Source: Mizuhopecten yessoensis
Taxonomy: Eukaryota
Length of the DNA: 64,000 bases
NCBI RefSeq assembly: GCF_002113885.1
Contig: NW_018408880.1
Location: 1,728,966-1,792,965 of the forward strand
Direction: 5' to 3'
Both the position numbers and the translations under genes were made by a program. This document shows positions 3,656 to 59,214 of this stretch, piece by piece. The notes under the pieces were generated by a model. It had not been told where the DNA came from and made no database searches. It saw only the letters and a list, made by a program, of their open reading frames with translations. Positions within the stretch are counted from its first letter, which is position 1, and each line of letters starts with the position of its first letter.

Positions 3656-6600
3656 TCATGAAAGTCTCACAGCTGAAAATGTATCTCTTTTAGAAGATTC
3701 CTTTTCCTGCTTTCGACGCTGTTGTTCCAAATTTCGTTCCCGACGCTCTGATCGTTTCTGTTCCTTTATGGCAGCCTCAGCTTGCCATGATAAATCTTCC
3801 TCACCTTCATCATTCCAGCCAGTCTGTCGGTCGTCCCATGTGCCTAACTCTGGTCCCTGGAACATCACAGAAAAAAAAAATGTTGGTCCATATGAATAAT
3901 TTCAGTTCATTATACATTTATAAACACAACTTCATTAGTTCAACTATGTGTATGGAGGATGACGTTTAATGGTTTCCTATTGAATACCATATTTTGTAAG
4001 TATTTAAAAAAAAAAATTCAGGTTAACAAGTGATAAATACCTGTATATTTAAGTAATAAACAGCATTCTGTTCTGTGTTATAGGACCATAACACGGAACA
4101 GAATGCTGTTTTATGCTTATATTTACATTCTTCATTTTTTTTAAATTTTCATTTCTAATTTCGCAAAACATTTTTAAATTCATATTTCGGGGTGTTTGTT
4201 CAAATGGTAGAACAGCCCAAGGAATTGTGCACGGAATGTTGTCCTGTGACTTTCCCCCTGCAAAAATATAGTTCGTGAAAATCAACACAAAAATATTGAT
4301 ACAATTTCCAAACTTAACCAATCTATATAATCTATATATTCAATTAATATTTTATAATAGTCTTGCATAAAACAGTGAATATTATTGAATAATACTTTTT
4401 TGTTGTTGCTTATACTGCTTTCTAGTGCGGAGGGGAATAGCGATTCGATAGTTAATATTCGGACCTGTGGAGATATCACTATGCCTGTGTCATGGTCTTA
4501 TAACATGGAACTGGTCTTGGTAGTTCACCGGTATACACTGTACTGTATACGGTAGTGGCAATTCAGAGCAAATGTAAATATTCTGATATAAGTGGTGTTA
4601 AAAGGGACAAGCCATCAAATTCTCTATATTTTATTTAAACTTTTAAAACCATCAAAATGAAAAAGTAACTCAATGGAAATTAGTAGTGTAATATTTCATG
4701 TCATAATATGGTGTGGTCCTGCATGACAACATGGCTGTGAACCGCATTGAATGGGGGACTCGACATAACTCCATCACTTTCCACTATTACTATCATAATA
4801 GCAAAACGAGAACAAATCTGTAAGACACAAATGGCCTAGTATTTTATGACAAAATTCTCTCAGTAAAACTATCACGTTCAATCATATACATAGAATTTTA
4901 TATATCACTTCCAAAAACAATTGGTTCTTCCGATGGCAATAATCTTGTATGACCAATACAATAATCCTATCAAAATCTTAATAAAGTTCCAAATGATTTT
5001 TTTTGTTTATACTTAGAAGTTGTATTTAGAGTATTTGCCTGCATAAAGCATAATACATAACCTATTGGTACTGTATTACTGGTATTTTTTTCTCCTCACT
5101 TAACTCATTCACTCCTGAAATTTTATAATGAACTATTCCAGCCTTTGAATTGGAACGGTTCAAATGTGTCTTCAGGGTTGAATGAGTTAACACATGTATG
5201 CAGCTGCACTGGAGCCCAGCCATTGATACCCAAGACAACGTTCTGGTGAGATTTGACCGTAAAGCTGATGGTTACTTACAGCAGATAAAGGTACATCAGC
5301 AGTACTAGCCATAGCAAATCTATTGGACTGATTCTTCATCTCTTCTTTCTGTTTGATCAAAACCTGAAAATATTCAAGGATTTCATTTCATGTCACACAT
5401 ACCTCAAATCAAGTTCTCGACAATAAAATGAGGGTCATTATCACAGTTAGGCAAAATGTAGGTCAAGTCTGAAAACTGCAGGTCATATCAGCACTTTTCA
5501 AAGTCATCAAAATCAAAAGTATGGCATCTATACTATTAAAACTTGTCTTAAACTACCATGGTAGTATGTCTCTTCATAGGGCATTTCACTTCATATTTAA
5601 AGCTTTAACAAGGACTCAAACGCTCGTTTGTGTCAAAAAGGTCATTTTTACAGTTTCAATACTGGAATGAACAACGCAAATGAAGAAGATTCCAAAATCT
5701 AACTTCTTTTGAAAATTTTAGCATGACATGAAAGTCATTTGAAGACATACCGGTAGTGATCAAAATATATTGACAAAACAATAATGGAATTGTTGGCCAA
5801 AAGCTCAGGAATTGAAACAAAAACAAGTCTGAATACATTAAAGATTTATTTGGCCGCTAGGCCACTATTTATAATGTGTGTTTGCCTAAACCTGACCTAG
5901 GATTTAATAATTGGATAGGTAGGTGCGTGGGTGGGGAAAATATCTGATTTCATTTCACAAAGTCCTAAGGTAGAGCCATCGCCAAGGTGAGTAGTGGCGG
6001 ATATGTAAGTTCCAGTGTCCTGTGCTTGGATATGAGAAAGTATGCAGGGCGATTGGAGAGTAAGGGCAAATCTAAAAGGGTACATCAATCGCAAAAAACT
6101 TGAGACAGGTTTATATTTTATTTCATAAATGTAATGTCACTTTTTTCACTGGTTTAATAAATCCTTAAAACTACATTTTGATTTAATGAATGATCTGAAT
6201 ATGATTGGTTTGGTTTAGGCAAACATTCAGTGCCCTAAAATATTGATAATAATATAAGCCATGGCCAATTTTCACTTTTAGTATCCCGTCTTATTTTCAA
6301 ATCAGGCTTATTATCAAGATTTGAGTGTCTTTCATTTCATGAATACAAAAGTAATTTTTGTTTACCTTTTTTTGTCTCTTAATTCTCGGAGTCATATCTT
6401 GAAAATAGTCTGGTTCTGGTTCAGACAACTCATCGTGATCATGTGACAGTGACCTTGACCTGGAGTAATTGTGATTGAGTGACCTTGAATTACTGCTCTG
6501 ATCTTGATCCCAATTCTCCCAAGATTGTAATTCAGGCTGAAACATAAAGATATAACAATGTTACAATGTTCTAAAGATTTTTTGACAATATGTTCAGGGG

Positions 6601-11900: not shown

Positions 11901-14900
11901 TGAAAGATAAGCTGTTGATTTTCAAATAATCTATTTTGAAGTTTGTCCTCATAAGCTTGCTTGTACAGTGGTTAGGTTGAAATCTAAGAAATTAATCAGA
12001 AAAAAATATGTATGTATATTGACATTATGAAATATGCATTTAAAGTATATTTTCCCTACTCTTTCAATTTTCTTTTCATGAAGGTACCAATTTTATTATA
12101 AAAAAAAAATCATTGAAACATGTACTTCAGTCTTTTAAACTTGCGTGAACACTGCAGTGCACTGGAATTAACATTATTGTTCACTGGAGTTAACAATGTA
12201 GTGAACTGGAGTTAACAATGTAGTGAACTGGAGTGCACTACAAGGTGCACTAGGTACCAAGTTAAGTTTGCTCCCAACTTTAAATGTAGTTGTGCTGAAA
12301 AAAGTGTCGGCAGCAAGCTGTAGTAAGTGTTTCAACATTGGGTACTGGGCCTTAGCAGCCTGTTTGGTAAAAACTAATTGGTACTGTTAGTGTTCCTCAC
12401 GACTCCAACATACACAAATTGCACCGACTCTCCCTTTAGATCTGGTGAAATTTAAAAGTGATTCTGTATACCAGGAATTTTTTTTCGCCCAGTCAAACTT
12501 TGGCCCTTCACCAGAATAATCCATATTCACCACAGTGCTAATTTCGCCTTCACATTTAATAACTAAATGTATCCATGTTATATTTTGTTTACTAATGTTC
12601 ACTTTAGTGATAAATTCACCTTCATTGCGGCCGGCAAAACAGGTGAGAATTAAAGTGCAGCGAAAATTTCCCATGCTTGGGCTACAAATAATGTTAGCCC
12701 ACCAGCTATGTGGCCATCGACCTCCTGTTATACTTTCAATTGTGTCCCACCAAAGCAAAGGTGGTATATAGGGATCGCTCTAATGGTATTGGCATTGGCA
12801 ATCTGCATAAATGGTTTCCTTACCGTAACATTTGAAAGAATGCGTTAATTTCAGGGAACTTTCTATGAAGACATAGATACACATGTAATATCATTAACCA
12901 GTTTGTATTCTCGGCCAAATCTAAAAACCAGTATACTCACATTCATGGAATTCTTGTTCATTTGTATGAGTGGTTTATAGAATAAGAGCTTCTATGGTTT
13001 GAAAGTTGATTGTTAACCTTTTTCTTGCCAGGTTGAATGCTCCGCTGCCGGACGAGGAGTACGAGGAGCGAGAGAAACACGCTAAGCTAATTGGACAATT
13101 GAAGTAAGTCTTGAATAGTTTCAACAAAGTTTCTATACAAGTCTTTAAAATTTCATTGATCATGTTTTATAATATTTTAAATTTAATTCATTCACATTGT
13201 AACCTACTGACAGTGTTCTCCCCAGCTGGTTTTTGATCCGCTATGGCACCTATTTTTAACCCTTCCATCACAGTGAAAAATTGGAAAATGGAAATTATCA
13301 CGTACAAATATATTCACATTTGACTTTTCAAATTATTCCTGGTGTATTGGCTCTACTACTGCCTTCATGATGTGTGTATTTGTTAACTATCTCAACACAA
13401 AATTTTCTGATTTCTGTTGTCTACGAAACTATGAAATTAATATGCAAATATAGATAAAAACAACAATATCTATGTTTTTGATATATATGCTTATGAATTA
13501 AGTATTAATCTTGTCCTAATTTAAAAAAAAAAAAATGGAGATTTTTTGCCTTACATCGTTGCTGTGTGAGAAATAAGTTGTTGTTTTAGACTTTGATTAA
13601 TTGTTGCTGGACTCTGATGATTAATTGTTGCTGGACTCTGATGATTAATTGTTGCTGGACTCTGATGATTAATTGTTGCTGGACTCTGATGTTTAATTGT
13701 TGCTGGACTCTGATGTTTAATTGTTGTTGGACTCTGATGATAAATTGTTGCTGGATTCTGATGTTTAATTGTTGCTGGACTCTGATGATTAATTGTTGCT
13801 GGACTCTGATGTAACGTACATTGCAATTGTGAATACATGTAAAATGGACAACCATACAACAGCTATAGTTTCAAACACTGATAACTTCTAAAAATGAAAT
13901 TGAAAGGCAGGAACAGGTTATGCTATACAAAGATTTCACAGCAAAATATCATAGGATCATTTAAACTAAGTGTTACTTTCTACATCCTATAATATTTTGG
14001 ATAATTTTATTTCAGAGCCGCTGAATCAAGAAATAGATTAAGGATCATGAGATTACGGTACCAATCAAATAGGGTAAGATATCACGCCTACCGTATTTAT
14101 CAGGCAATAAACCCATACCTGGTGATAAGCCCACTGATGGCTATTGCAGTTCAGTAGAAGAGCAAACAAATCATATTTCATTGTCCTGTAATAAGCCCAC
14201 CCCTACGTACTTACATCATCCTCAAAATTCCAGGGGTTGCCTTCAACTACGTTCTCTGCAGCCCTGGAATATGGCATAGCGAAATCAAAGGCTTAATCTG
14301 TATGCACCACCTTGTGGAAGTTACAAGAGGTCACTTCATAGCTAGCATAACAGTAAAGTTGAGCGGCTTTGATGTCAGTTGACAGTCCTCAGTAATTTAC
14401 AAAGAACAGGTATCAGCTTAACGATTGGTCAGGTTTTTATACTTGAAACCAAGAAAAAAATCAAAAAAATCTGGTGCTACTAAACTCATTCACCCCTGAA
14501 ATACCATGATGAACTAGTCCAGCCTTTAAATTGGAAGAGCTCAAATGTGTCTTCAGGGGTGAATGAGAAAATGTGGCTTTTGAGAGCAATATTTGAGTGT
14601 TTCATTTATTCAATATTTAGGTGCTTTTTCACAGATTCCAAAACAAACAAAAACTTGATTGTTAGTATATGTCAGTTAACAACCTAGTACAATATCACTT
14701 CCAGTAAAAGTCATCACCTGATATTCTAAATTCTGAATACACAATATCTCAGTTGTTATGAAAATTCATGGTTTATTATCATGGACTGAAACAGTAAATC
14801 TGTTTATTTTTTTAAACAATTCCAACATTTCATCACTTTTTCTTAGCTCACATTTCGTAGTTTTGAGGAATTTTGATGTGCATACAACGCTTATTGGCTT

Positions 14901-15654
14901 ACAACACAGCCACATTCTTGAACACTAATTTGAATTATGAAATAATAATACTGCAGCATGATTTTTATCTCATTTCATTACAACAGAGTCAAGAAATCAG
15001 TCATTTGATTGCGTGTCAGCCCACAGCTGCCAGGGCTGTACGGTTACAGGCTTTGGTTCCCTCGTACGCTGAACGCCGACAAAGGAAGGACACTCTGGAT
15101 AAGTTATCGGTGAGTACATAGCATTGAAGTCTTGTCTGGGGCACTAAACTGCCAGGTGCTTTAAATTTCAGGAAATATATAATTTAAAACCTGAATTCAT
15201 GTTTCATTAATTTGGGAACGATTTGTTCAAATAAAACTGTTAAGAAAAAATACAGAATTTGGCTGATTTGGTAATGTTTTTAAATGTTATCCAAATTTTC
15301 ACTCTTTTGGTAAATGAAAAATTGCCAAGGTAGTGGTTGAGAAACAGTAAATTGTTTTATTGTTTTACAAATTGAGGACCTTCAGCTGTTGATTTAAATA
15401 GTAAGGAGGATGTTTACTTTTTAACATTTAAATAGTTTCAGAATAAACAAGCTAAATGTAAAATTGTTGCCAATTGGAACGATTTTGAAAGATTATATTG
15501 GTATATATATCTTGTATAGATGTAAGTGGTATTTGCAAAATTTATTTCTATTTGTTAATAAAATGCACTTTGTACTGATGTTGTTTTACAGAGGGAGCGC
15601 TGTGAAAGGTTGCTGGAAGATTCTCAGGGATTGCTCGTGAACAGAATGCACTGA
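8980..15654 (+). CDS. LKAAEAR1: LKAAEAR motif-containing protein 1 homolog, 174 aa, 7 coding exons
   Basis: Exons 8980-8985 (MP), 10308-10427 (ENLPPID...ARNWQKKDVKKMHPQLRSKYLA), 11720-11802 (YEDPAKE...), 13032-13103 (...KLIGQLK), 14016-14073 (AAESRNRLRIMRLRYQSNR), 14987-15109 (SQEISHLIACQPTAARAVRLQALVP...DTLDKLS) and 15592-15654 (RERCERLLED...*). All GT-AG with consistent phases, 525 nt total. IGQLKAAESRNRLRIMRLRY matches the LKAAEAR family motif. Confidence 0.9.
10459..11482. mobile_element. ~1-kb non-autonomous DNA transposon with TTAA TSD (Kolobok-like termini)
   Basis: TTAA|GGATCCTTGTCCCACTG ... CAGGTGTTACCAGGATCC|TTAA: imperfect TIRs with TTAA on both sides; no transposase ORF. Confidence 0.6.
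10930..11000 (+). mobile_element. Degenerate tRNA-derived SINE head
   Basis: GGTAGCTGAGATTGGTAGAGC (A box/D arm) ... GGGTTAGAATCC (B box); resembles 2601-2680. Confidence 0.45.
12170..12240 (+). repeat. Short 22-bp tandem repeat (ACTGGAGTTAACAATGTAGTGA)
   Basis: About 3 copies in LKAAEAR1 intron 3. Confidence 0.7.
13595..13811 (+). repeat. 24-bp minisatellite (ATTAATTGTTGCTGGACTCTGATG) x9 in LKAAEAR1 intron 4
   Basis: Near-identical units; they generate 8-aa periodic pseudo-ORFs in three frames. Confidence 0.95.
14483..14567. mobile_element. MITE family A copy
   Basis: AACTCATTCACCCCTGAAA...TTCAGGGGTGAATGAG. Confidence 0.8.
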
Positions 15655-20615: not shown

Positions 20616-20859
20616 GCAACATATTTTAAAGAACCAAAAGGCCTATTGTCATGTTATTAGGCATGTAGTTTCCTGGAATGGTGTCTATGAAAGTCTGCCA
20701 ATCAACTTACCTTGAACTACTGTCAGTGTCACAGGAGTCAAATATGTAAAAAAAAAAAACTTCAAACGGCTTCTTTTGAAGAACCAAAAGGCCCAGAATC
20801 ATGATGACAGAACAAAGTTTGAGAATATTACGTTGGGGCTTCCTAAGATTGAGTCAAAC

Positions 20860-21351
20860 ACATCCACCGTTTATACAACATTGAATCCCCTTGGTCTAAG
20901 GATGCTTCAGACCAAATTGGGACGAAATCCCTTAATCCCTATGGTAGAAGAAGGATTTCAAAGGCTTACCTCTATTTCCCCTATTCGGCCCCATCCTTCT
21001 GCCCCCAGTGGGGCCACACGGTTTATACAATATTGAGTCCCCTACCCCCAAGGATGATCCAGACCATATTAGGATAAAAAAAAAACCCCTAATTCCTACA
21101 GTAGAAGAAGGATTTTACAGGTTTTACCTCTATTTCCCCTATTGGGCCCCACCTACCTGCCCCAAGGGGGCCACACCCACCGTTTATACAAAATTGAGTC
21201 CCCTTGGCCTAAGGATGCTCCAGACCAAATTTAGTCCTAATCTAATTGGCCGTTCCGGACAAGTAACGTTTTAAAGGAAAAGTTGACGGACGGACGACAG
21301 ACGCTGCGCCATGGCATAACCTCACTTGGCCTTCGGCCAGGTGAGCTAAAA
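20860..21351 (-). mobile_element. Truncated Helentron/HINE-like element nested in an older TGACC-type repeat array (~20625-21960)
   Basis: Ends in GACGGACGGACG...GGCCTTCGGCCAGGTGAGCTAAAA, the reverse complement of the 5' end at 29949. Its ~155-bp units match the 30080-31700 core; the flanks carry GAAGAACCAAAAGGC/GGTCAAA units like the 42600-43580 core. Confidence 0.75.
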
Positions 21352-22878: not shown

Positions 22879-24547
22879 GGAAACATATTTCGATTACACG
22901 GCGTCAGAGCGAAACTTACCGGCTTAAAAAACGTTACCTGCAGATAGGATTACAAAACTTAACAATGAAACGACTGTTTATTTATGCAATTCTCTCTTAA
23001 TTATTTGCGCTATAATTTAATAATTAATCATTGACATGTCGTTTAGATTATAGGTATGTTTCTTATAAATTGATTTGTTATAACCATATATTAGATCAAA
23101 GATCGTGTACATGTAGTTTCAAATTGTAGAAAATAGCAGAAGAAAACATATGTCAGGGGATACACTAGAATGAGAGAAGCTTTGTAGTCAAAAATAGTCG
23201 AGCAAGTGAATGATAAATATCTCAAGTTAACATCGAATGGTATGGGGTACGTACTGGGGGTAGAACGCCATATCTGCTTTGTGAATTATAATCTCTGCTG
23301 GCCTTCTTTGCGTTGACCCCCATTCAATAGAAGACGGGTCGTGCAAAGGCCTATGATTAATAGCAAATGCAGGATATTTGACGTCCCTTCCACTAGATGA
23401 GAAACCTTTTAACATTAGTGTACACGTAAACGAATGTAAGCGCAATTCGTATTTTCTGCACCCCCCCCCCACACANCTGCCACACACAAACGCCTTCTGT
23501 TTCATCCCCGAAGAGTCCTAGAAGAGCGAAACAGATTCATTATGCAGTGTAAATCATTTCTGACATACTGTATGTACTTCTATATTTTAAAGGTACGTTA
23601 ATCTTTTAACATATTGAACTGCTAAGTTTTAGAATGAATTTTGTGAGTCACCATACGTGATTTGACAAATTGAATTATCACTGATGTAAGTCTGTTCAAC
23701 AGTGGCATACAATTTTTATCTTAAACATTCCAGGTGTTTTTCGACCCCAGCAACACGATTTAAGACCTCATTTTAAATAACAATTTATGTGACAAACATT
23801 TTAATAATCTAAACATGTTTTAAAATGTAAACGATTTGCTTTGTATTGAAAGAATACAATATGCTAGCGACACGAGACTTATTTAAATGTAGCATGTTCT
23901 AGCTTACTTTTGCGTACCTGTTCATTTCCTTTCTATACCAGAACACAAGGTATGCAGTTTTACCTGTATATATTACGTAGTCATGCTACGTCAGATCCGG
24001 GTAACGCTGTTCTCGAACCACTTAAGTAACAGGTGTCTTTGTGTTCTCGGCAATATCATTTTATCACAGTGAATCAGTGGAAATGAGACTTCAATATTGA
24101 CCGCGGTACTACTAGGTGTAATACTGTTAAGAAATTGGATATTTACATATATTGATTAGGACATATAAACGCCAGCTGGTGCATTGAACAATAAAACTAC
24201 ACGATGGCGTCTTATTGTTTTTTTACAAGTAATAGCTACAGCAACATTGATTTTGATAATCCTGAATTTATGTTGTTAACGTGTGCTCAGTACTTATCTG
24301 CAGCTATATTTAACAGCGACATAAGTCAGCTCTGCTTGGACGCCATACTGTCGACATCATCAACTAAGACTCGAGAAAGCTCTTTCGCTGATATACAGCT
24401 ACTGAAAAGCCGTGAGAACTTAATTATTCCGTAAATTTATTATGTAAATATGTTGGTTCCAATATTTACTTCATCCACTTCATGTAAAATCAATGTTTAT
24501 CTTCGACTTATTTCAGAAACAAAATGAACTGAAACAGATTATCTAAG

Positions 24548-27500
24548 ATGTCGGACCAAATTGATGAATCTCCGCACCCCAATGGTGACCAAGAATCTGG
24601 CGAGGTCACAAAGTCTTCACCAGATAAGGATTTGGGATCCGAAGAACCAGACATGGAGAAAGATAGTTTAGATGGTGATTCAAATGATTTGAAATATTAT
24701 CAACCCGAGGCACAAGAGACTAATTACGACGGAGAAGCTTTGGATAAAAAGAATCCATTTCATGGCGCAACCGGATATGACGATGCATACAAACATTCGC
24801 CCCATTCTCAATCTGACTCTTTTGACTCGCTTAGCCAATCAAATTCAAGCACAAACGAAAATTCTGAATTAACAGCTCTTTTGCCTTCAACAGAATCGCA
24901 AGAGGCACACACCGGAAGAAACAAAAATGAGTCAAAATCACGACTTCCGGTGAAAAGTGCGTCGGGATTAATTCGAAAATCGTCATTGCCAAAACAAAAG
25001 ATAACAAGAGACATCAAAGTTTCAAAAAACATGACAAGGAGTAAAACAGTTGATTTAGCAAAGGGTGTTCTTTACCATGAAGACAGGAAAAAGCTTCCTC
25101 GCGGAGAATCGCAGACATGTTTAAACGATAATCACGGTGTGCGTGAGACTGTTACGAGTCGTATGCGTTTTGAAAAACGTCACATTCCACACGAACAAGA
25201 GTGTGACGGTGATGATTATATGACGCCAACACAGAGAAGGGACCAGTTGCTTAAGGACTTAAAAGTTCAGGTCAAGGAATTAACGAGTGAGATAGAGGCT
25301 CGAGATCAGCAGATAGAAAGACTGAAGCAGGATATAGATGAAGAAGCACGTAAGATAATTGAACAGAAGAATGAGGAGGCAAGGCTGCTTCAATCCAACC
25401 TCAACAGCCTGAAGACTGAACATGATGATCTGAAGATGTCTTATCAGAAATCCTTATGTAGCATTGTCGATTTGGAAGAAACCCTTTCCCAACTCAATGT
25501 AAGTACATGCATTTCGAGAGTTGAGAAGAGCAAGGGTATGACATGTCATTGCCTGTACTGAATGGATTGATTGCAGCATCTTTTATTACCCACGTCAAGA
25601 AATGACTGTTAATATTGAGTCAGTGTTCAACGAAGTCATTGTGTCCATTTTATGCGATGTTACAATCCAGGATCATCTTGTACGGGGTTAAACAATGCTC
25701 AAACAAGACAGGCGTGCGCGTGTCCTCTTTTTAAATCATGGGCATTTATCTCCCGTTTATTCATTTTTAGATGTTTTCTCGTCTCAAATCTCAAAAATCA
25801 GTGAAATCTCGTTAATCTGTCGGCAGCTTTAGATATTGACTCTTGTTATTCAGTCCAGAAAAAGTTTCAATTACGTTCCCAATATAATTTATATTGGGAA
25901 TGAATTATCAACCGATTTACACAATTCTTGTAACACTTTAAAGTGATCTTTCTTAAAGATAACGAAAACAAATACATCTCTAATAAAAGTGCATTTGAGT
26001 AAAATCCTACTATTTCTAGTAAAATTCTAAAACATGACGTCAACCACAATGTTGACAAGTGACCCAGCTGTGAACGTAGTGTATTTTTATTTTTTTCAAA
26101 AAACATTTTTTTCGAGAGTACTTTATAACAACATAAGGTACGATAATAAGTCTGAATATTTTTTTGGCAATCCTCAATATAAATGAACCAAATTGACTAA
26201 ACGTGATTACGTGCTGTAATGATGATCTGTATTAAATATCATATTATATAGAAAGTATTCGAAAGTCGAACTAGAGAGTTAAAAGCTCAGCAGTAATGAA
26301 CATTAAACAAGTGTCAATATGTTTCCATACTATTTGTGCAGTTCAGTTTTTATCGTTCAATACATGCTCCATATCAGTTAATACGTGCATGCGAATCAAT
26401 CCTATTCCCGAGAGTTAAGGGTGTGGTCATTTAAATGCATGTTTTTATCACTTTAAATCTGGGTCGATCTAATCACCTTGTTTCAGGAACGTATTGCGAG
26501 CCAGGAGAAACGGAATGAGCAGATTTACTTAGAAATGTATAAAAAGGGCCAGGAATCTTCCCAGTTCGAGCGGAATGTTGAAGTAAGTAAAACATAATAA
26601 TTACTACATAGGGCACATATGTAAATTGAATTTTTCATACTAATTGCATGTAAATAGTACGACTCCATGTAAATAGTAGGACTCAATGTAAATAGTGGAA
26701 TCCGTGCAAACTAAACAATATTGTTTTTCTGAATTATTGATCTGATATCTCTATTTTTATGGATACATACCACCAAGAGATAAAGAAACCATGTACAATA
26801 CACAATACGCTTACACGAGTATGTTATATATCACAGTAGGTAAATATTGATCTGGTCCATTGACTATAACACCATTAACTGGTTAGCTTAACATCAATTT
26901 ATCAAAATTTAGTTAAAAAACAAATTACCACTAACGTTTTTATGTATTATGATTCAAAATGCCAATCCTTAGAAAAAAGGTATACACAAATATTGGTAAC
27001 TTATATTCAATAGTATTTTGAAAATTTACTCTTAACAGTTTGTTAAGCAAACAAGACTTGAACGACCGTGCTCAGGTAACACGTGCAGTATATCTATAGA
27101 CAACCCAAACAAAACGTGATGTTTGTTCTCCATCTGGGTTTAGTATTGATGGCATTATACAATGACAATCTAGTCTTGGCCTCGAACTACTCGGTAGTGA
27201 AACAGACGTAAAACCAATCAATTAATCAGTTGGCCTCGGTTTCCTGAGCGTTCCTTAGCTAAAGTTACGATTTCCCCTTAATAAAAGCAATTCTTTCCCA
27301 ATATATATAGAGAAATTTACGTCAAAGAAACAACCTGTATCGATCTGTTTTGTTAAACCCAAGCGTAGTGGTTTAAAGTATTGTTATCGCGCTACAACTT
27401 TGGGAGCCGGCATAACGATTGCGTTGCAGTCGATATTGCATGGTTATTGAAATTCAAATTATAATAAATTACTTTATTAAGAAAATAAATAAAAAAGTTT

Positions 27501-29000
27501 TACTGGTGACAATACATATGTGTGGCGATAAAGCGTTCATTCAGGTATTTAGTTTGCAATTATATTATTGATCTGTATTCAGGACTATAAGATGTATATC
27601 CGAATACCGTACACGTGAATGCTACAGTGGAAACGAGATTTATGCGATTTTCGAATTATTATTCTGTATTATGTCGTAACTGACTAACTGGATATTGTAA
27701 AATTTATCAGTTTATCGTATGCAGCAAATTATGATAATAGTAGAATATGGTATAGGTGAATCCCTTTGCTTCGTTAACAACGCATGTAGACCATTCTCGA
27801 GAATACTTGAACTCGTGATTTAGCGAAAACAATTTCTATATTAATAGTAATTATTCTTGGAATTAATTTGTGCTGAAAATTTCCATTCGCGTAAGAGTGT
27901 CCTCGAATGCTTGCATTCGTGATATAGAGGAGGCTATTTCTTATTGAAATCTTCCGCACAAATTAATTCCAAGAATCCGCGAAAATTAATGCGTACATTA
28001 GTATCTCAGCAGAGTGATTTATAGTGTCACAGCTGTATGATACAATGAAGCTACGATCGAAGTCCGACATTGTGGACGATACGCTAATATATAGCTACGC
28101 TTACGGTATTAAGATGCAAGCACCCGGCATTTAAACGATCTAGTTGTGGTTTTAAATTGGGATGATGTCACTTCTGAAAGTGAAATATGATATAAAATTC
28201 GATTTTGATAATATGATATCCAACAACTCATCGTAAACCCATATACTAATATTCCCATTTCGCTGTATTTCTATATTAGTTTCGAAACAATCCAGACTTT
28301 AATTTTCTCCTTTTACCTCTATACCTCTGATGATTCGTTATGAATGCGAAGGCTATGCCCATATGGTACAGTGAAATGCTATTTACTGACTTTCTGCATC
28401 AACCAAAGAAGTTCTTAAATACAGTAAAACCTCGTTATACTGCCACCATTTGTACCAGATAAAATTTGGCGTTTGGCGATAAATTGAGAAAAATGTGTAA
28501 AGGAATTCTTAAGGAAACGAGAAAAGGGACATTGACATATATTGACGGTAAACGAGGTGGCAGATGAAACTGGGGGCATATTATATCGATGTTTCACTCT
28601 AAGTGTTTCGTTACTTAGTTATTTCTAGTGCTTAAACAAATTCATAAAGACTGACGTAGAATTATTGTTCTCTTCTGTCTAGCTGGAGCGTCTCGCTGTA
28701 AATGCTGAAAGTTCCAGTATGACAATGAATGAACTCATTAGAAAACTGGTGGTCACGGAATCCGAGCTGGCGAAATGGCAGTCTATTCGACGTCATGAGT
28801 CGTACGAGTCGGCAGAGAAACCGGAAACACAAGCGGATGTGACGTTGAGGTTCCTCAAAGACTCGTTCTTTCATTACCTAACAGATGTGAAGGAGTCCGA
28901 TCACCATCTTCGAGCCATGATCAGAATATTTAGCTTTACTGACGTACAGAGGAGGAAGATATCGGCATGCGTTACAGAAAAGCAGAACAAAAGTGCATGA
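24548..29000 (+). CDS. qtc: Quick-to-court-like coiled-coil protein with C-terminal GRIP-like domain, 454 aa, 3 coding exons
   Basis: Exons 24548-25498 (disordered N-terminus, SRLP, YMTPTQRR, coiled coil; donor AAT|GTAAGT), 26487-26582 (ERIASQEKRNEQIYLEMYKKGQESSQFERNVE) and 28683-29000 (...TLRFLKDSFFHYLTDVKESDHHLRAMIRIFSFT...*). Phase-0 GT-AG introns. MYxKGQE and TLxFLK..F.YLTD...HLxA..I resemble insect quick-to-court and GRIP domains (recalled, not searched). Confidence 0.75.
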
Positions 29001-29033
29001 TCCTCCTAACTTGTTGAATTCTTTTGTTTTTGA

Positions 29034-29275
29034 TATTTCGTCTTTTCGTATTGCAGAGTTATCTGCTCTTGATAGCAGGTATTGATTGTTACGTCATTTG
29101 TTTTTGAGAGTAACGTCATCATTTTTTGAGAAAACGACGTAATTGTCTCACACAAACTAATGACGTAACAATCAATACATGCTTACAAGAGCAATTAACT
29201 CTGCAGTACGAAAAGACGTAAGAATCAATACATGCTCACAAGAGCAGATAACTCTGCAATACGAAAAGACGGAAT
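29034..29275. mobile_element. Foldback MITE family C with duplicated right arm, in the qtc-like 3'UTR
   Basis: Homologous to 19133-19313; AATCAATACATGCT.ACAAGAGCA...ACGAAAAGACG occurs twice (29170-29218 and 29222-29275). Confidence 0.85.
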
Positions 29276-29948: not shown

Positions 29949-31861
29949 TTTTTAGCTCACCTGGTCCGAAGGACCATGGTGAACTATATGCCATACCGTA
30001 GCGTCCGTCGTCCGTCCGTCCGTCCATCAGCTTTTCCTTTAAAACGCTACTAGTCATGAACGACTGAGCAGACTCTGACTAAATTTGGTCAGAAGCATCC
30101 TTGCGGGATAGGGAACAAATTTTGTATAAATGGTAGGTGTGGCCCCCCTCGGGACTGAGGGGCGGGGCCCAATAGGGGAAATATAACAATGTCTATAAAA
30201 TCCTTCTTCTGTAGGAATGAAAGGATTTTTTTATCATATTTGGTCAGAAGCATCCTTGGGTGAAGGGGAACACATTTTGTATAAACGGTGGGTCTGGCCC
30301 CCATGGGGGCTGAGGGGCGGGGCCCAATAGGGGAAATATAACAATGTCTTTAAAATCCTTCTTCTTCTGTAGGAATGAAAGGATTTGGTCCATACTTGGT
30401 GTGGAGCATCCTTGGGTAAAGGGGAAATAATATTGTATAAACGGTGGGTCTGGCCCCCATGGGGGCTGAGGGGCGGGGCCCAATAGGGGGAAAATAACAA
30501 TGTCTTTAAAATCCTTCTTCCTCTGTAGGAATGAAAGGATTTTTTTATCATATTTGGTCAGAAGCATCCTTGGGTGAAGGGGAACACATTTTGTATAAAC
30601 GGTGGGTCTGGTCCCCATGGGGGCTGAGGGGCGTGGCCCAATAGGAGAAATATACCAAATTATTCTTTAAAATCCTTCTTCAGTAGGAATGAAAGGATTT
30701 GTTCCATATTTGGTCTGAAGTATCTTTGGGTGAAGGGGAACCAATTTTGTATAAACGGTATGTCTGACCCCCCTGGATGCAGTGATGCGGGGCCCAATAG
30801 GGGAAATAGAAAAGTCTTCTTCTACCATAGGGATTAAGGGATTTTATCCTAGTTTAGTCTGAAGCATCCTTGGGCCAAGGGGACTCAATTTGGTATAAAC
30901 AGTTGGTATGGTCTCCCAGGGGGCAGAAGGGCGGGGCTAAATAGGAAAAATAGAGGAATAACCTTTAAAATCCTTCTTCTTCTGCAGGAATGAAAGGATT
31001 TGGTCCGTACTTGGTGTGGAGCATCCTTGGGTAAAGGGGAAAAAATTTTGTATAAACGGTGGGTCTGGTCCCCATGGGGGCTGAGGGGCGGGGCCCAATA
31101 GGGGAAATAGAGGTAAAACCTTTATAATCCTTCTTCTCCCATAGGGTTAAGGGATTTTATCCCGATTTAGTCTGGAGCATCTTTGGGCAAAAGGGACTCA
31201 ATTTTGTATAAACAGCGAGTGTGGCCCCCCTGGGGACAGAAGGGAGGAGCACAATAGGGGAAACAGCAAATTCTTCAAAATTCTTCTTCTTCTGTAGGAA
31301 TGACAAGATTTGTCCAAATTTGGAATGAAGCATCCTTGGGTGAAGGGGAACCAATTTTGTAAAAACGGTGTGTCTGACCCCCCTGGAGGCAGAGATGCGG
31401 GGCCAAATAGGGGGAATAGAAAATTCTTCTTCTACCATAGGGATTAAGGGATTTTTTCCCAGTTTAGTCTGAAGCATCCTTGGGCCAAGAAGACTCAATT
31501 TGGTATAAGCAGAGGGTGTGGTATCCCAGGGGTAAAAGGGCGGGCCCAATAGGAAAAACAGAGGTAAAACCTTTAAAACCCTTCTTCGGCCATTCGGATT
31601 AAGGGAGTTTATCCTTTTTTTAGTCTGGAGCATCCTTGGGCCGAGGGGACTCAATTTTGTATAAACGGTGGGTATGACCCCCTTAGGGGCATAGGGGAGG
31701 GGCTCTGTTTGAAGTTTGTTCTCGCTATATCTCAAGTACTGGATGGATCTTTCTGAAATTTCATATGTACTTACAGCACCTACCATGGAGTGCTATATCT
31801 ATATATACTTCGTTCCGATTATTTTAAACATATTCAGGTGAGCGATACAGGCCCTCTTGTT
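29949..31861 (+). mobile_element. Full-length Helentron-associated (HINE-like) non-autonomous element with ~11 tandem ~145-158-bp core repeats
   Basis: 5' TTTTTAGCTCACCTG, hairpin GGTCCGAAGGACC, (CGTC)n microsatellite, core marker TTGTATAAACGGT recurring every ~150 bp, and 3' CAGGTGAGCGATACAGGCCCTCTTGTT (subterminal IR GCTCACCTG/CAGGTGAGC). Confidence 0.8.
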
Positions 31862-39796: not shown

Positions 39797-41650
39797 TTAA
39801 CCATCCATGGTAGGTTCGAGGTGCCACACTAAATGTGCCGTGAACTCGAGGCGATTCCCAAGCTTCTTCAAGCATTTCCTACAGGTGAAGGGATCCGATT
39901 CATCCGCGGAGTGAAGGGAATTGTGCAACAAACTCATGGCATAATCCTCAAACCATATACAGCAATGCTCGCACCGCATCATCTTTTTCACCTGAGTTCC
40001 TGCAGGTACTTTGTTGACCGTACTTGGACCCGCTGGAAGTGTTGTCAGGGTGCTACCCCAGGCTGTTCGAGTGGAATTTACCAGTTTTGTTACATTAGAA
40101 CTATTTTCTGTAACGCCTGTGGTTATTCCGGGGCTAGAACTGACAGCGTTGATGGTAGAAATTGGAACGTACGACTTTAATTTGGCTCGTAACTTCTGTT
40201 GCATGGCTGCCTTGTAGCTTGCTGGTCCAATAACTTTAAATTTCATCTTCTTCACCCCGGTGGATGAGCGAGGCCCCACCACCACTTCCTGAAGCTTTGG
40301 GGTCGTAGAATCATTATTTTGAACTTTAGAATTTGAAATTTCTTGTTCATTTGTCTTTGATACTGATTTTTCTTCATTTTTATCGTTTATCTTACTGCCG
40401 TTGTTTTTAGATTTCTCACCCTCGTCCGATTCGTCATCATCATCATCCATAGTTTGACATTCCTTACTTAAGTCACTTGACGTCCCGTTACCTGCAGCAT
40501 CCACAGGTACTTCAATCTCATCAGCATCTTTTGGTTCCTGTTTGATTTTTTTCAGGTCTGACGGTAAAATAAACATGTTCATATCATCAGTGAAAGTAGT
40601 CGTGGACTGATATTCATTGTATCCGTCGCCATTGTTTGCTTCGCTCGCATTATTCTCACCAAAAGATTCTACTTCCTTCTTCTCTGAATCCCCACCTCCA
40701 TATGAAGAGAGTTCCATCTCATTCTGCACAGCGTTTGAAATGGCATCTTTGATGATGCTCTCCATAGCAATATCTTCACTGAGTTGGAAATCGGCTGGTA
40801 GACCATTGGCTTTTTCATCTTTAGCTGCGATGCGGTGAACATTATTCTGAGGCACTGTATCCCGTTTTCCAGAGAAATCTTCGGGAACTTGGGGCTGGGG
40901 GCCCAAACTAAATTTAGCAAGGCCAGTGACAGGATTTTCATCATCTTCTGGTATACTGGGCTCTTTTTTGATGATCACACCATTTTCTGTGACCTCAGTT
41001 GTCGGGGGATACAAAGACAGATGACTTTCCTTATGAGTATGAAGCTGCGTGATCAAGTCGAACGCCTCGCCGCATCGGTGACAAGTAAACACTGTTGAGA
41101 CTCCATGACTCTGCTGCAGGTGGGAGTGTAAGGTTTGACGGCGCAGAAACTTCATGTCACAGAGGCGACAAACATTTCTTTGTTTCTGAGGCATATGAAC
41201 CTTCAGATGTTGTTTGACGTGATCGGAGCGAGTAAATCTGCGACCACAGATATTGCACGCGTACGGCCGTTCTCCGCTATGTACTCTAACATGGCGTTGT
41301 AATTTTGACGGTGTCGAGTAAGTTTTCCCACAAACATAACAAGAATGCGATGTTGACTTACCCCTCGAGTGTGTCGCTATGTGGTTCTGCATTTCGACTG
41401 GCGTATCAAACTGCCGTGCACAAAATCTGCACATAAATTTCGTGACTACCTGTACTGTATACTTGTCTTTATTGGAAGGTGTGGCCGTCGCAGTAATCAT
41501 CGACTTCTCCACACTTGACCTTGTCCAAACACTGGATCGCGTGGCAACAGACGATGTTGACGCCTCCCCATTCATTGACTGATCATCCTCCTTGACCTCT
41601 TTCTTAATTGCTTCAGGGTCAAGGTTACCTGTTGTGGCCTCTCCATTCAT
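39797..41650 (-). CDS. C2H2 zinc-finger transcription factor: 5 N-terminal fingers plus Ikaros/Hunchback-type C-terminal finger pair; single coding exon, 617 aa
   Basis: Uninterrupted ORF. Fingers CRFC..H..H, CYVC..HVRVH, linker SGERPY, CNIC..RSDHVKQH, CRLC and CHRC. Acidic linker with IKKE/IKQE SUMO-type motifs. C-terminus CEHCCIWFEDYAMSLLHNSLH..DPFTCRKC..NRLEFTAHLVWH. Acceptor TTTTCAG at 41700-41706. Confidence 0.92.
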   Translation of the reverse strand: MNGEATTGNLDPEAIKKEVKEDDQSMNGEASTSSVATRSSVWTRSSVEKSMITATATPSNKDKYTVQVVTKFMCRFCARQFDTPVEMQNHIATHSRGKSTSHSCYVCGKTYSTPSKLQRHVRVHSGERPYACNICGRRFTRSDHVKQHLKVHMPQKQRNVCRLCDMKFLRRQTLHSHLQQSHGVSTVFTCHRCGEAFDLITQLHTHKESHLSLYPPTTEVTENGVIIKKEPSIPEDDENPVTGLAKFSLGPQPQVPEDFSGKRDTVPQNNVHRIAAKDEKANGLPADFQLSEDIAMESIIKDAISNAVQNEMELSSYGGGDSEKKEVESFGENNASEANNGDGYNEYQSTTTFTDDMNMFILPSDLKKIKQEPKDADEIEVPVDAAGNGTSSDLSKECQTMDDDDDESDEGEKSKNNGSKINDKNEEKSVSKTNEQEISNSKVQNNDSTTPKLQEVVVGPRSSTGVKKMKFKVIGPASYKAAMQQKLRAKLKSYVPISTINAVSSSPGITTGVTENSSNVTKLVNSTRTAWGSTLTTLPAGPSTVNKVPAGTQVKKMMRCEHCCIWFEDYAMSLLHNSLHSADESDPFTCRKCLKKLGNRLEFTAHLVWHLEPTMDG

Positions 41651-55948: not shown

Positions 55949-56271
55949 CATCCTCGATACTCCGAGGGTTTCGCTCACATTCGCTCTTTGAACCCCTGGA
56001 ACACGTCAGAGCAAAATTGGAGGCTCAGTGTGGATGAGACAAGAAGACTAGTTCGATCTTTTGAGATACATAATTAATGGAAACAATCTCGCGGTCGCGT
56101 AGCGGTAAAAAATACTGACTTTGAAGTCAGGTGTCGCCCCTCTGTTATCTTCAAAGGACAGGAATCGGCCTAGCGATTTGTCATTTTTTTTACCTGAGAC
56201 CAATCAAACAGCTATTGTTGTGCCTTCAATTTCGCTATCACATATTCAGAGAGCGAAGTGAGAGTAACCCC
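55949..56271. mobile_element. MITE family D copy (reverse of 45265-45603)
   Basis: CATCCTCGATA...GATGAGACAAGAAGACTAGTTCGATC...GAGACCAATCAAACAGCTAT matches the reverse complement of 45265-45603. Confidence 0.8.
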
Positions 56272-56489
56272 TACACCTCACTCTACTCCGACATTGGTAT
56301 GAACTTAACGTTTACCCAGGAGATCGAATATCTATCAATATATCGTTTACAGTATATATCTGATTCTAATACCCTATACTCCATACCCTTTACCCTCTAT
56401 TCAATGATTAAATATAAACTTAATGGTATATTTTACAACAATTAGAAACCAAGTTATTTCAACTTATATAAAACGCTCTTGTTCGCCCA

Positions 56490-56600
56490 GATGTTATCAC
56501 GCGCAGGTCTTACTGTGGGAGGAAACTGGAGTACCCGGAGAAAAACCCAAGAGTTTGGACAGGTGACCCCCTACCTTTTCACGTCCGATCAGGGAATACA
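56490..56600 (-). mobile_element. SINE fragment (V-domain-like)
   Basis: GGGAGGAAACTGGAGTACCCGGAGAAAACCC is the antisense of the GGGTTTTCTCCGGGTACTCC.GTTTCCTCCC core seen in metazoan SINEs. Confidence 0.55.
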
Positions 56601-57990: not shown

Positions 57991-58257
57991 CCTGGTGTTG
58001 GGAATTGTTTTAAAATTCATGATTAATCATTTCTATTTCTGAAACAATTGATTATTAATCATTGATCGTTCATAAAATGAAGGAAAAAATAAATGGTGAA
58101 ACATTAACTAAAATGGATTAAAAGTGGCGGATTCTTTTTAAATATACACGTATAGTTATACACTGAAATGCTGCTGAAATGCAGTTTAAAGCAAAATCGC
58201 GAGTACAATTGTGACAGTAGAGGGAACATTGTACAGAAAAGAGGACTGAGAGTAAAC

Positions 58258-59186: not shown

Positions 59187-59214
59187 GTATACTTGACGGT
59201 AGATTGTAGATGTA

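What the first reader, a model, noticed from the sequence alone, without database searches (positions are those of the whole stretch)
24548..29000. Quick-to-court-like GRIP protein carries a syntabulin/syntaphilin signature and sits two genes from EBAG9: candidate invertebrate SYBU/SNPH counterpart
Seen: the spliced 454-aa protein has a long Ser-rich disordered N-terminus (with SRLP, an SxIP-like EB-binding motif), then DDYMTPTQRRDQLLKDLKVQVKELTSEIEARDQQIERLK opening a coiled coil, and a GRIP-like end. Known (from memory): vertebrate syntabulin/syntaphilin open their coiled coil with EQYLTPLQQKEV..RHLK..LK......R..EI..LK, the same register, and human SYBU is the immediate neighbour of EBAG9 at 8q23. 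Inference: qtc-like proteins and syntabulin/syntaphilin may be one family. Invertebrates would target membranes with a GRIP-like domain, whereas vertebrates use a tail anchor. I do not know of this link being established.
Basis: partly seen in the sequence, partly recalled or inferred. Interest (0 to 1): 0.75.

Follow-up and report, generated by a model that had tools for sequence, protein, structure and literature searches.

The report
Scallop quick-to-court: syntabulin/syntaphilin relative with GRIP end
This scallop gene belongs to the quick-to-court family, and that family is a true relative of the vertebrate microtubule-to-organelle linkers syntabulin and syntaphilin, carrying a Golgi-type GRIP domain where the vertebrate proteins have a membrane tail anchor. 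Papers still say these proteins have no invertebrate homologue.

Summary
A three-exon gene (24548-25498, 26487-26582, 28683-29000, + strand) encodes 454 aa. Both introns are seen spliced in RNA-seq, and the product equals the annotated Mizuhopecten yessoensis protein P0001.

- A 95-column profile built only from mollusc and arthropod relatives found named vertebrate syntabulins and syntaphilin in an exhaustive search of 1.84 billion proteins (E 5e-11 to 2e-7).
- Profile-profile comparison gives 97-98% probability (E 1e-11 to 1e-12, up to 126 columns).
- Reversed or shuffled vertebrate sequences score at most 6 bits, against 47-59 bits for the real ones.
- 115 of 140 invertebrate segments hit Pfam Syntaphilin.
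- A basic SxIP-type motif is shared upstream.
- The C-terminus is a GRIP-type three-helix domain (top PDB matches are golgin-245 GRIP), but the family has an invariant Phe where golgins have the Arl1-contact Tyr. There is no tail anchor.
- EBAG9 lies two genes away. EBAG9-SYBU are adjacent in human and killifish.

Many insect quick-to-court proteins already carry both Pfam GRIP and Syntaphilin hits, so the link sits unremarked in databases. I found no paper stating it. Function is inferred: a dimeric microtubule/kinesin-to-membrane linker.

The parts
24517..24547 (+). 5' UTR part of the first coding exon. It follows an AG acceptor, and an in-frame stop lies at 24530-24532.
   Evidence: The RNA contig of run X9 begins at 24517. 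Sequence read.
24548..25498 (+). Coding exon 1 (residues 1-317): disordered N-terminus, SxIP-type motifs, family signature and first part of the coiled coil.
24938..24949 (+). SRLP (residues 131-134), an SxIP-type motif within KSRLPVK.
   Evidence: The motif is conserved as [KR]SR[IL]P upstream of the signature in molluscs, arthropods and vertebrate syntabulin: 59 of 126 sequences by the strict pattern, against 0.8% of shuffles.
24980..24991 (+). SSLP (residues 145-148), a second SxIP-type motif. It reads SSIP in Argopecten.
25127..25138 (+). DNHG (residues 194-197). It aligns with the vertebrate CGDNHGI(K/R).
   Evidence: hhalign of P0001 against the vertebrate alignment.
25217..25240 (+). 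Family signature YMTPTQRR (residues 224-231), which opens the coiled coil.
   Evidence: Y, T, P and Q are invariant in 140 invertebrate segments. It aligns ungapped with the vertebrate YLTPLQQK.
26487..26582 (+). Coding exon 2 (residues 318-349), holding the conserved box IYLEMYKKGQE (26523-26555).
   Evidence: The box is found in all complete invertebrate members by a local HMM.
28683..29000 (+). Coding exon 3 (residues 350-454 plus stop).
28821..28994 (+). GRIP-type three-helix domain (residues 396-453). Phe406 (28851-28853) stands where golgins have the Arl1-contact Tyr.
3656..3868 (-). ORF holding the last coding exon of an EBAG9/RCAS1 gene. The exon's 5' boundary was not determined.
   Evidence: The atlas first hit is RCAS1_C at 0.94.
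6297..6545 (-). ORF holding an internal EBAG9-like exon. Boundaries were not determined, and the identity rests on my reading only.
14548..15654 (+). 3' part of the intervening LKAAEAR-domain gene. Its start lies further upstream and was not mapped.
   Evidence: Called gene in L001 with PF15478.

Best explanation
[quoted passage not shown] That family is the protostome counterpart of vertebrate syntabulin (SYBU) and syntaphilin (SNPH), most likely the pro-orthologue of both.

Shown here:
- a transcribed, spliced 454-aa protein;
- sequence homology of the region from about 30 residues before YMTPTQRR through the coiled coil to the start of the YLEMY box with the SYBU/SNPH core;
- a shared basic SxIP-type motif upstream;
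- a C-terminal GRIP-type three-helix domain and no hydrophobic tail;
- EBAG9 two genes away, as next to SYBU in vertebrates.

Inferred mechanism. The coiled coil makes a parallel dimer. The dimeric GRIP-type end docks the protein on a membrane, probably trans-Golgi or a Golgi-derived carrier, through an Arl-type GTPase. The disordered basic N-terminus binds EB proteins at growing microtubule ends through SRLP/SSLP. The conserved core does what it does in SYBU/SNPH, namely partner binding of the syntaxin, kinesin-1 or microtubule kind. The protein would thus link a membrane compartment to microtubules or kinesin.

In the vertebrate lineage the membrane module was exchanged for a tail anchor that targets mitochondria and vesicles.

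My odds: homology 0.9; orthology rather than a shared module 0.7; GRIP ancestral and tail anchor derived 0.6; the linker mechanism as stated 0.4.
For: Gene model and expression.

Homology.
- An invertebrate-only profile (A2, 18 sequences) finds syntabulin of Amia (P0088, 58.8 bits, E 5.1e-11), a darter and dog, and syntaphilin of a bird (P0164, E 1.8e-7), among 1.84 billion proteins.
- hhalign of A2 against the vertebrate alignment A3 gives 97.4% probability, E 1.1e-11, over 69 columns.
- hhalign of A4 against A3 gives 97.8%, E 1.1e-12, over 126 columns, ending at YLEMY against KYFIDINI.
- P0001 alone against A3 gives 87%, E 3.8e-6.
- Reversed vertebrate sequences score at most 1.8 bits and shuffles at most 6.2 bits.
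- Pfam Syntaphilin is matched by 115 of 140 invertebrate segments; the next most frequent family is matched by 8. It passes its curated cut-off in the Lottia protein P0019, in P0025 and in scorpion qtc.

Family identity. The Centruroides 'protein quick-to-court' hits the mollusc profile at E 2e-24, and the architecture is collinear with it.

SxIP. Syntabulin is listed as an SxIP plus-end tracking protein in PMC4834103.

GRIP.
- The only PDB sequence hits of the C-terminal profile are the golgin-245 GRIP domain, 1R4A and 1UPT.
- 15 of 23 C-termini hit Pfam GRIP, best E 4e-10.
- The AF2 model has pLDDT 85. The Foldseek first hit is 1R4A_E with TM 0.74 (by target) and rmsd 1.9 A.

Architecture dichotomy.

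Synteny. The human gene list runs ...PKHD1L1, EBAG9, SYBU, KCNV1... (PMC4534011). In killifish ebag9 and sybu lie 4 kb apart (PMC12134989). In the scallop.

SYBU domain map: kinesin-binding 145-230, syntaxin-binding coiled coil 310-417, tail 600-663 (PMC1804288).
Against: - The scallop protein itself gets no Pfam Syntaphilin or GRIP hit. The case is made at family level.
- The shared core is only about 70-126 columns at 16-23% identity, and part of it is coiled coil.
- Nothing C-terminal to the YLEMY box is shared with vertebrates. A shared module in otherwise unrelated proteins is therefore possible.
- The Tyr that golgin GRIP domains use to contact Arl1 is Phe in all 23 members aligned, so Golgi/Arl1 targeting is unproven.
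- No deuterostome invertebrate or cnidarian member was identified, so the direction of the anchor swap rests on protostomes against vertebrates only.
- EBAG9 was not found within 10 kb of the gene in Lottia, Lingula, Pinctada, Saccostrea or Haliotis. In the scallop it lies about 18 kb away, beyond that reach.
- Only 150 of the 283 profile hits could be inspected.
Confidence: 0.7

Rival explanations
1. Shared module, not orthology. The 'Syntaphilin' core (SxIP region plus YLTPxQxK coiled coil) is an old mobile module that was joined independently to a GRIP domain in protostomes and to a tail anchor in vertebrates. On this reading qtc and SYBU/SNPH are not descendants of one ancestral gene.
For: Similarity stops at the YLEMY box, and the C-terminal halves are unrelated. 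No intermediate form was seen. Linkage to EBAG9 was shown only in one invertebrate.
Against: Three collinear elements are shared: SxIP, DNHG and the signature with its coil. Among the 150 hits inspected, vertebrates have only SYBU/SNPH and invertebrates only qtc-like proteins. EBAG9 proximity in scallop, human and fish is unlikely by chance. My estimate is a few in 10,000 for random placement, or under 1% even given the same ancestral chromosome.
Confidence: 0.2
2. Chance or convergent resemblance: a short linear motif in front of a generic coiled coil, with no common descent.
For: Single-sequence Pfam scans of the scallop protein list only weak generic coiled-coil families. The whole-length profile against the PDB finds only coiled coils.
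Against: E 5e-11 in an exhaustive search of 1.84 billion proteins, with named SYBU/SNPH as the only vertebrate hits. hhalign gives 97-98%. Reversed sequences, which keep the composition, score about 0 bits. The SxIP and DNHG elements lie outside the coil. Synteny also argues against chance.
Confidence: 0.03
3. An ordinary trans-Golgi golgin (of the GCC88 or golgin-97 type) whose N-terminal resemblance to syntaphilin is irrelevant to its function.
For: It has a coiled coil plus a C-terminal GRIP-type fold. UniRef names P0001 'GRIP domain-containing protein'.
Against: The closest named relatives are arthropod qtc proteins, not golgins. The coiled coil is short, about 120 residues. The GRIP Tyr is replaced by Phe throughout the family. 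The conserved SxIP, signature and YLEMY box are absent from the golgin-245 GRIP chains matched.
Confidence: 0.05

Closest known systems
Syntabulin (SYBU/GOLSYN), vertebrates
   Same: - An N-terminal basic SxIP motif: RSRIPRLVL against KSRLPVK.
- A Ser-rich disordered region.
- CGDNHGI against NDNHGV.
- YLTPLQQKEV.IRHLK..LK against YMTPTQRRDQLLKDLKVQVK in the same register, followed by a coiled coil that aligns up to KYFIDINI against IYLEMYKK.
- EBAG9 as a near neighbour.
   Different: - SYBU ends in a hydrophobic tail anchor (Kyte-Doolittle about 2.0 over 19 residues, roughly 55 residues from the end) that targets mitochondria (PMC1804288). The scallop protein has no such segment (maximum 0.37) and ends in a GRIP-type domain.
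- The scallop has an 18-residue insert, ETVTSRMRFEKRHIPHEQ, between DNHG and the signature.
- The mapped kinesin-binding segment of SYBU (145-230) lies upstream of the shared core, and I could not align it.
Syntaphilin (SNPH), vertebrates
   Same: The same signature and coiled-coil core. P0164 is hit at E 1.8e-7 by the invertebrate profile.
   Different: SNPH is tail-anchored to axonal mitochondria and acts as a static anchor. It is not next to EBAG9. No GRIP domain or YLEMY box was detected in it.
Drosophila quick-to-court (qtc) and arthropod orthologues
   Same: The whole collinear architecture: an N-terminal SRIP motif, YLTPTQR(K/A), a coiled coil, the MYL(E/K)MYKKGQE box, and a C-terminal GRIP-type domain with TL.FLK...Y.FLT.
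   Different: Arthropod proteins carry a long poorly conserved insert between the signature and the second coiled coil, and lack the mollusc RETVTSRMRFEK preamble. The only function on record is a courtship phenotype in flies; the cell biology is unknown.
Golgin GRIP domains (golgin-245/GOLGA4, PDB 1R4A and 1UPT)
   Same: A three-helix C-terminal domain after a coiled coil. These are the best, and only, PDB sequence and fold matches.
   Different: - Phe replaces the Tyr of E-Y-L-[KR] that inserts into Arl1. The role of that Tyr is from my knowledge of the Arl1-GRIP structures, not tested here.
- Scores are weak (E 0.3; Foldseek E 0.8).
- The scallop domain does not reach the Pfam GRIP threshold.

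Membership tests
Syntaphilin/syntabulin family (Pfam PF15290) | Match to the conserved core (YLTPLQQKE signature plus following coiled coil) | tested here: met
   At family level: hmmsearch E 5e-11 to 2e-7 to named SYBU/SNPH; hhalign 97.4-97.8%; 115 of 140 relatives hit PF15290. The scallop sequence alone gives 87%, E 3.8e-6 against the vertebrate profile, and no Pfam hit at E<=1.
Syntaphilin/syntabulin family (Pfam PF15290) | C-terminal hydrophobic tail anchor | tested here: not met
   The maximum 19-residue Kyte-Doolittle mean is 0.37 in P0001, against 1.4-2.0 in vertebrate members. No complete invertebrate member has such a tail. The hydrophobic end of P0153 looks like intron read-through.
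Syntaphilin/syntabulin family (Pfam PF15290) | N-terminal SxIP motif (syntabulin is listed as an SxIP plus-end tracking protein) | tested here: met
   SRLP at 131-134 and SSLP at 145-148 lie in a basic stretch. The motif is conserved across molluscs, arthropods and vertebrate SYBU. The listing is in PMC4834103. EB binding itself was not tested.
Syntaphilin/syntabulin family (Pfam PF15290) | Binding of kinesin-1 heavy chain, syntaxin-1 or microtubules | not testable with these tools
   The domain map comes from PMC1804288. The shared core should overlap the syntaxin-binding coiled coil, judging from the signature position in the 648-667-aa syntabulins returned here (residues 240-268); this is my estimate, not an alignment to the human numbering.
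Syntaphilin/syntabulin family (Pfam PF15290) | Genomic neighbourhood of EBAG9 (SYBU locus) | tested here: met
   In the scallop EBAG9 lies two genes upstream. The two genes are adjacent in human and killifish. EBAG9 was not seen within 10 kb in five other lophotrochozoans, where the reach was too short to decide.
GRIP domain (Pfam PF01465) | Sequence match to the GRIP profile | tested here: inconclusive
   The scallop C-terminus gives no hit. 15 of 23 family C-termini hit at E<=0.1, best 4e-10. P0026 and P0027 pass the curated cut-off. The family profile's only PDB hits are the golgin-245 GRIP domain at E 0.3.
GRIP domain (Pfam PF01465) | Three-helix fold at the extreme C-terminus after a coiled coil | tested here: met
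   The AF2 model has mean pLDDT 85.4 with helices 15-32, 37-48 and 52-69 of the 70-residue segment. Foldseek ranks 1, 2, 5 and 6 are golgin-245 GRIP chains; 1R4A_E has TM 0.74 (by target) and rmsd 1.9 A.
GRIP domain (Pfam PF01465) | Conserved Tyr that contacts Arl1-GTP | tested here: not met
   Phe is invariant at this column in 23 of 23 members. It aligns with the Tyr of FEYLRK in 1R4A and 1UPT.
GRIP domain (Pfam PF01465) | Arl1-GTP-dependent Golgi localisation | not testable with these tools
   This needs binding or localisation experiments, or a complex model.
quick-to-court (qtc) family | Collinear architecture with arthropod qtc: SxIP, YLTPTQR signature, MYLxMYKKGQE box, GRIP-type end | tested here: met
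   See alignments A4 and A7. Centruroides 'protein quick-to-court' hits at E 2e-24. NCBI already names the Haliotis orthologues 'protein quick-to-court-like'.

The most novel reading that the evidence does not exclude
Qtc-like proteins, syntabulin and syntaphilin are one ancient bilaterian gene family of SxIP-bearing, dimeric microtubule-to-membrane linkers. The ancestral form was recruited to Golgi-type membranes by a GRIP-type domain. At the base of vertebrates the membrane module was swapped for a tail anchor, redirecting the linker to mitochondria and transport vesicles. Fly qtc (with its courtship phenotype) and mollusc qtc would then be genetic entry points to the ancestral function of proteins that the mitochondrial-transport field treats as lacking invertebrate homologues.
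Probability: 0.55. Interest if true: 0.65.

Novelty: new member of a known kind. Interest (0 to 1): 0.5.

Why it matters
Syntaphilin and syntabulin are central to models of axonal mitochondrial docking and kinesin-1 cargo transport. Published work says they are not detected in insects (PMC2374702) and that no C. elegans homologue is known (bioRxiv 10.1101/2023.05.30.542959).

The evidence here says that an invertebrate counterpart exists and is the qtc family. It occurs in molluscs, arthropods, a nemertean and the nematode Trichinella; a brachiopod protein carries the signature too.

That has three consequences.
- It gives the family a Drosophila mutant.
- It suggests that the conserved job lies in the SxIP-signature-coiled-coil core rather than in mitochondrial anchoring.
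- It offers a clean case of a membrane-targeting module being exchanged during evolution.

It also offers a cell-biological hypothesis for qtc, whose molecular function is unknown. The gain is tempered because Pfam hits already place both domains on many qtc proteins. The advance is recognition and testing, not discovery of an unseen family.

Tried and rejected
- Pfam on single exons and on P0001 gave only weak generic coiled-coil families and a spurious AMP_N hit.
- PDB sequence search with exon 3 alone gave nothing relevant.
- PDB search with the whole family profile gave only generic coiled coils. Only the C-terminal profile pointed to GRIP.
- A possible invertebrate tail-anchored form was rejected. 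The hydrophobic end of P0153 lies in a junk-like stretch typical of read-through into an intron. Other high hydropathy values sit in truncated or read-through ORFs.
- Naming of the unusual hits (YLTPLQRK and YLTPLQKK types, and the plankton forms P0150 and P0152) largely failed, because most come from unnamed ENA or Logan contigs. P0150 comes from a metagenome or metatranscriptome contig. No deuterostome invertebrate member could be identified.
- A third word search with a broader profile was saturated by arthropod qtc proteins.
- Synteny walking was limited by 10-kb flanks. EBAG9 was not found in the loci of Lottia, Lingula, Pinctada, Saccostrea, Haliotis or an unnamed ENA contig.
- The idea that the downstream zinc-finger gene is TRPS1-like, which would extend the 8q23 block, is not supported. 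The gene looks like an Ikaros/Pegasus-type gene, with C2H2 fingers only and no GATA hit.
Searches used the three exons by reference and the database protein P0001 returned.


Full report
**What is there.** The window comes from the Yesso scallop, Mizuhopecten yessoensis (record NEDP02005553.1). On the + strand three exons (24548-25498, 26487-26582, 28683-29000) with canonical GT/AG borders give a 454-aa product.

Public RNA-seq confirms the model. Poly-A reads, and one 1459-nt RNA contig, join 25498 to 26487 and 26582 to 28683, and the contig runs from 24517 to 29060. An in-frame stop lies 15 nt before the ATG.

I searched the exons separately by reference and did not join them myself. The database protein P0001, returned by the search with exon 1, has the same length, is identical over exon 1, and reads through both junctions. 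I used it as the full-length protein.

**Anatomy of the protein**.
- Residues 1-195 are low-complexity (S 15%, D 10%, K 10%).
- They include a basic stretch with two SxIP-type motifs, KSRLPVK (131-134) and KSSLPKQK (145-148).
- NDNHGV is at 193-198.
- A mollusc-conserved preamble, RETVTSRMRFEKRH, follows.
- The signature YMTPTQRR is at 224-231 and opens a coiled coil of about 120 residues.
- The box IYLEMYKKGQESSQFER is encoded by exon 2.
- A C-terminal domain spans 396-453: TLRFLKDSFFHYLT...HLRAMIRIFSFTDVQ.

**Family.** Word-based searches found close orthologues in other scallops, then in oysters, pearl oyster, abalone (already named 'protein quick-to-court-like' by NCBI), limpet and cephalopods. 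At E 2e-24 they also found 'protein quick-to-court' of a scorpion. A broader profile retrieved more than 200 arthropod proteins, mostly named quick-to-court. The architecture is collinear throughout: SxIP, signature, coiled coil, MYLxMYKKGQE box and GRIP-type end. The gene is the scallop qtc.

**Is it related to syntabulin/syntaphilin?** The scallop protein alone gives no Pfam Syntaphilin hit. Relatives do. Three of the ten scanned pass the curated threshold, including scorpion qtc at 34 bits.

I built a 95-column profile of the signature region from 18 mollusc and arthropod proteins, with no vertebrate sequence in it, and ran the exhaustive search of 1.84 billion representatives.
- 283 proteins reached E<=0.001.
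- Among the best 150 were twelve proteins reading PEQYLTPLQQKEV.IRHLK; eleven have a hydrophobic segment towards the C-terminus (the twelfth, P0160, is a 182-aa fragment) and none has a GRIP end.
- Cluster look-up names the four I queried: syntabulin (Amia, Etheostoma, dog) and syntaphilin (blue tit). A fly hit is named 'GRIP domain-containing protein quick-to-court'.

Further tests agree.
- Profile-profile comparison of the invertebrate profile with an alignment of the twelve vertebrate proteins gives 97.4% probability, E 1.1e-11, over 69 columns.
- With the invertebrate alignment extended to the C-terminus it gives 97.8%, E 1.1e-12, over 126 columns. The alignment runs through the coiled coil and ends where YLEMY meets KYFIDINI.
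- The scallop sequence alone reaches 87%, E 3.8e-6, and also pairs NDNHGVR with GDNHGIK.
- Reversed vertebrate sequences, which keep composition, score at most 1.8 bits. 3000 shuffles score at most 6.2 bits. The real sequences score 47-59 bits.
- In the other direction, 115 of 140 invertebrate signature segments match Pfam Syntaphilin at E<=0.01 (best 6e-13). The next most frequent family is matched by 8.

A third collinear element lies outside the coil. It is a basic [KR]SR[IL]P motif near the N-terminus: RSRIPRLVL in vertebrate syntabulins, SRIPRL or SRIPV in arthropods, KSRLPVK in molluscs. By a strict pattern it occurs in 59 of 126 sequences, against 0.8% of shuffles. Syntabulin is listed as an SxIP-motif plus-end tracking protein (PMC4834103). 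I regard homology as established.

**The C-terminus.**
- A profile of 23 family C-termini has only two hits in the PDB, both the golgin-245 GRIP domain (1R4A and 1UPT, E 0.3).
- 15 of the 23 hit Pfam GRIP, best 4e-10, although the scallop's own does not.
- An AlphaFold model made with that alignment has pLDDT 85 and three helices.
- Foldseek against 350,000 PDB chains ranks golgin-245 GRIP chains first, second, fifth and sixth. The top hit has TM 0.74 by target and rmsd 1.9 A. E-values are weak, as expected for 50 residues.

So it is a GRIP-type domain. However, the Tyr of the golgin E-Y-L-[KR] motif, which from the published Arl1-GRIP structures is the key Arl1 contact (my knowledge), is Phe in all 23 members. 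Whether the domain binds Arl1, another small GTPase or something else is open.

No complete invertebrate member has a hydrophobic tail. All twelve vertebrate hits, and the eight further syntabulin isoforms returned with their clusters, lack the box and the GRIP end.

**Neighbourhood.** EBAG9/RCAS1 exons lie at 3656-3868 and 6297-6545 on the minus strand (atlas first hit RCAS1_C, 0.94). An LKAAEAR-domain gene ends near 15654. Then comes qtc.

In human the gene order is PKHD1L1, EBAG9, SYBU, KCNV1 (PMC4534011). In killifish ebag9 and sybu are 4 kb apart (PMC12134989). This microsynteny supports orthology with the SYBU locus.

I could not extend it. Within the 10-kb flanks available, EBAG9 is absent around the qtc genes of Lottia, Lingula, Pinctada, Saccostrea and Haliotis. 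In the scallop the distance is about 18 kb, so this says little.

The next gene downstream (39797-41650, minus strand) looks like an Ikaros/Pegasus-type zinc-finger gene rather than TRPS1-like.

**How it probably works (inferred).**
- The coiled coil dimerises the protein.
- The paired GRIP-type domains dock on a membrane, as in golgins.
- The basic N-terminus engages EB proteins and microtubules through its SxIP-type motifs.
- The conserved core provides the partner-binding surface. By my estimate from signature positions in comparably long syntabulins, it overlaps the syntaxin-binding coiled coil (310-417) and lies just after the kinesin-binding segment (145-230) (PMC1804288).

The result would be a microtubule/kinesin-to-membrane linker. 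In vertebrates the membrane module is a tail anchor that puts the protein on mitochondria and vesicles. GRIP-ended forms occur in molluscs, arthropods, a nemertean and Trichinella (a Lingula protein has the signature but no GRIP match in the sequence returned), and tail-anchored forms only in vertebrates. GRIP is therefore the likelier ancestral state, but no deuterostome invertebrate or cnidarian was identified.

**What is known.**
- No paper in the library holds quick-to-court together with syntabulin, or qtc together with SYBU.
- None of the 18 papers that mention quick-to-court is, by title or abstract, about this link. The one checked in full describes only coiled coils and a GRIP domain.
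- A comparative study states that syntabulin and syntaphilin are not detected in insects (PMC2374702).
- A 2024 preprint knows of no C. elegans homologue of syntaphilin.
- Yet the precomputed Pfam annotation already lists GRIP plus Syntaphilin on dozens of insect qtc proteins.

The relation is in the databases but unremarked. The scallop gene is a new, RNA-supported member of a known family.

**Limits.**
- Only 150 of the 283 profile hits were visible.
- A second SYBU-like gene in the scallop cannot be excluded formally. No scallop protein other than the qtc cluster, and no protostome tail-anchored form, appeared.
- All functional statements are inference.

Noticed in passing
window 28325-28481 and 28953-29100: Two short stretches, one in intron 2 and one in the 3' UTR of the qtc gene, have RNA depth tens to thousands of times that of the exons. 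They show many variant letters and loose ends running into unrelated sequence. They look like copies of an abundant, transcribed dispersed repeat.
   Followed up: no
window 39797-41650 (-): A single-exon 617-aa gene with N-terminal C2H2 fingers and a C-terminal finger pair. Its nearest atlas clusters are Ikaros family and Pegasus. There is no GATA finger, so a TRPS1-type reading, which would extend the human 8q23 comparison, is not supported.
   Followed up: partly
window 20776-21274 (+), 30089-30618 (-) and 31157-31786 (-): ORFs made of a repeated unit of the type ...PTVYTKLSPLGPRMLQTK... recur at three places and on both strands. This is a dispersed or tandem repeat family flanking the qtc gene.
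   Followed up: no
window 56000-64000: About 8 kb of strongly strand-skewed low-complexity repeat (GC skew -0.46, then +0.65 to +0.79). It has long ORFs in several frames made of TLYLVP or YSLPCTP units. It is most likely satellite-like DNA and not coding.
   Followed up: no
window 26523-26555 (residues 330-340): The invariant box (I/M)YLEMYKKGQE recalls, from my memory only, the IYLE end of the JIP1 'Y-acidic' motif that binds kinesin light chain. Here it lies inside a predicted helix and is not C-terminal, so the resemblance may mean nothing.
   Followed up: no
P0142 and P0177 (Trichinella, 1870-1879 aa); P0083 (Tubulanus, 1349 aa): A nematode and a nemertean have much longer proteins that still carry the SxIP motif, the signature and the GRIP-type end. 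The family therefore exists in at least one nematode lineage, although a recent preprint knows of no C. elegans syntaphilin homologue.
   Followed up: partly
window 23227-23505 (-): An ORF translation contains X, meaning an N in the sequence (assembly gap or masked letter). I left it as it is.
   Followed up: no
window 24525-24533: A tiny upstream ORF (ATG AAC TGA) lies in the 5' UTR, 23 nt before the main start codon.
   Followed up: no
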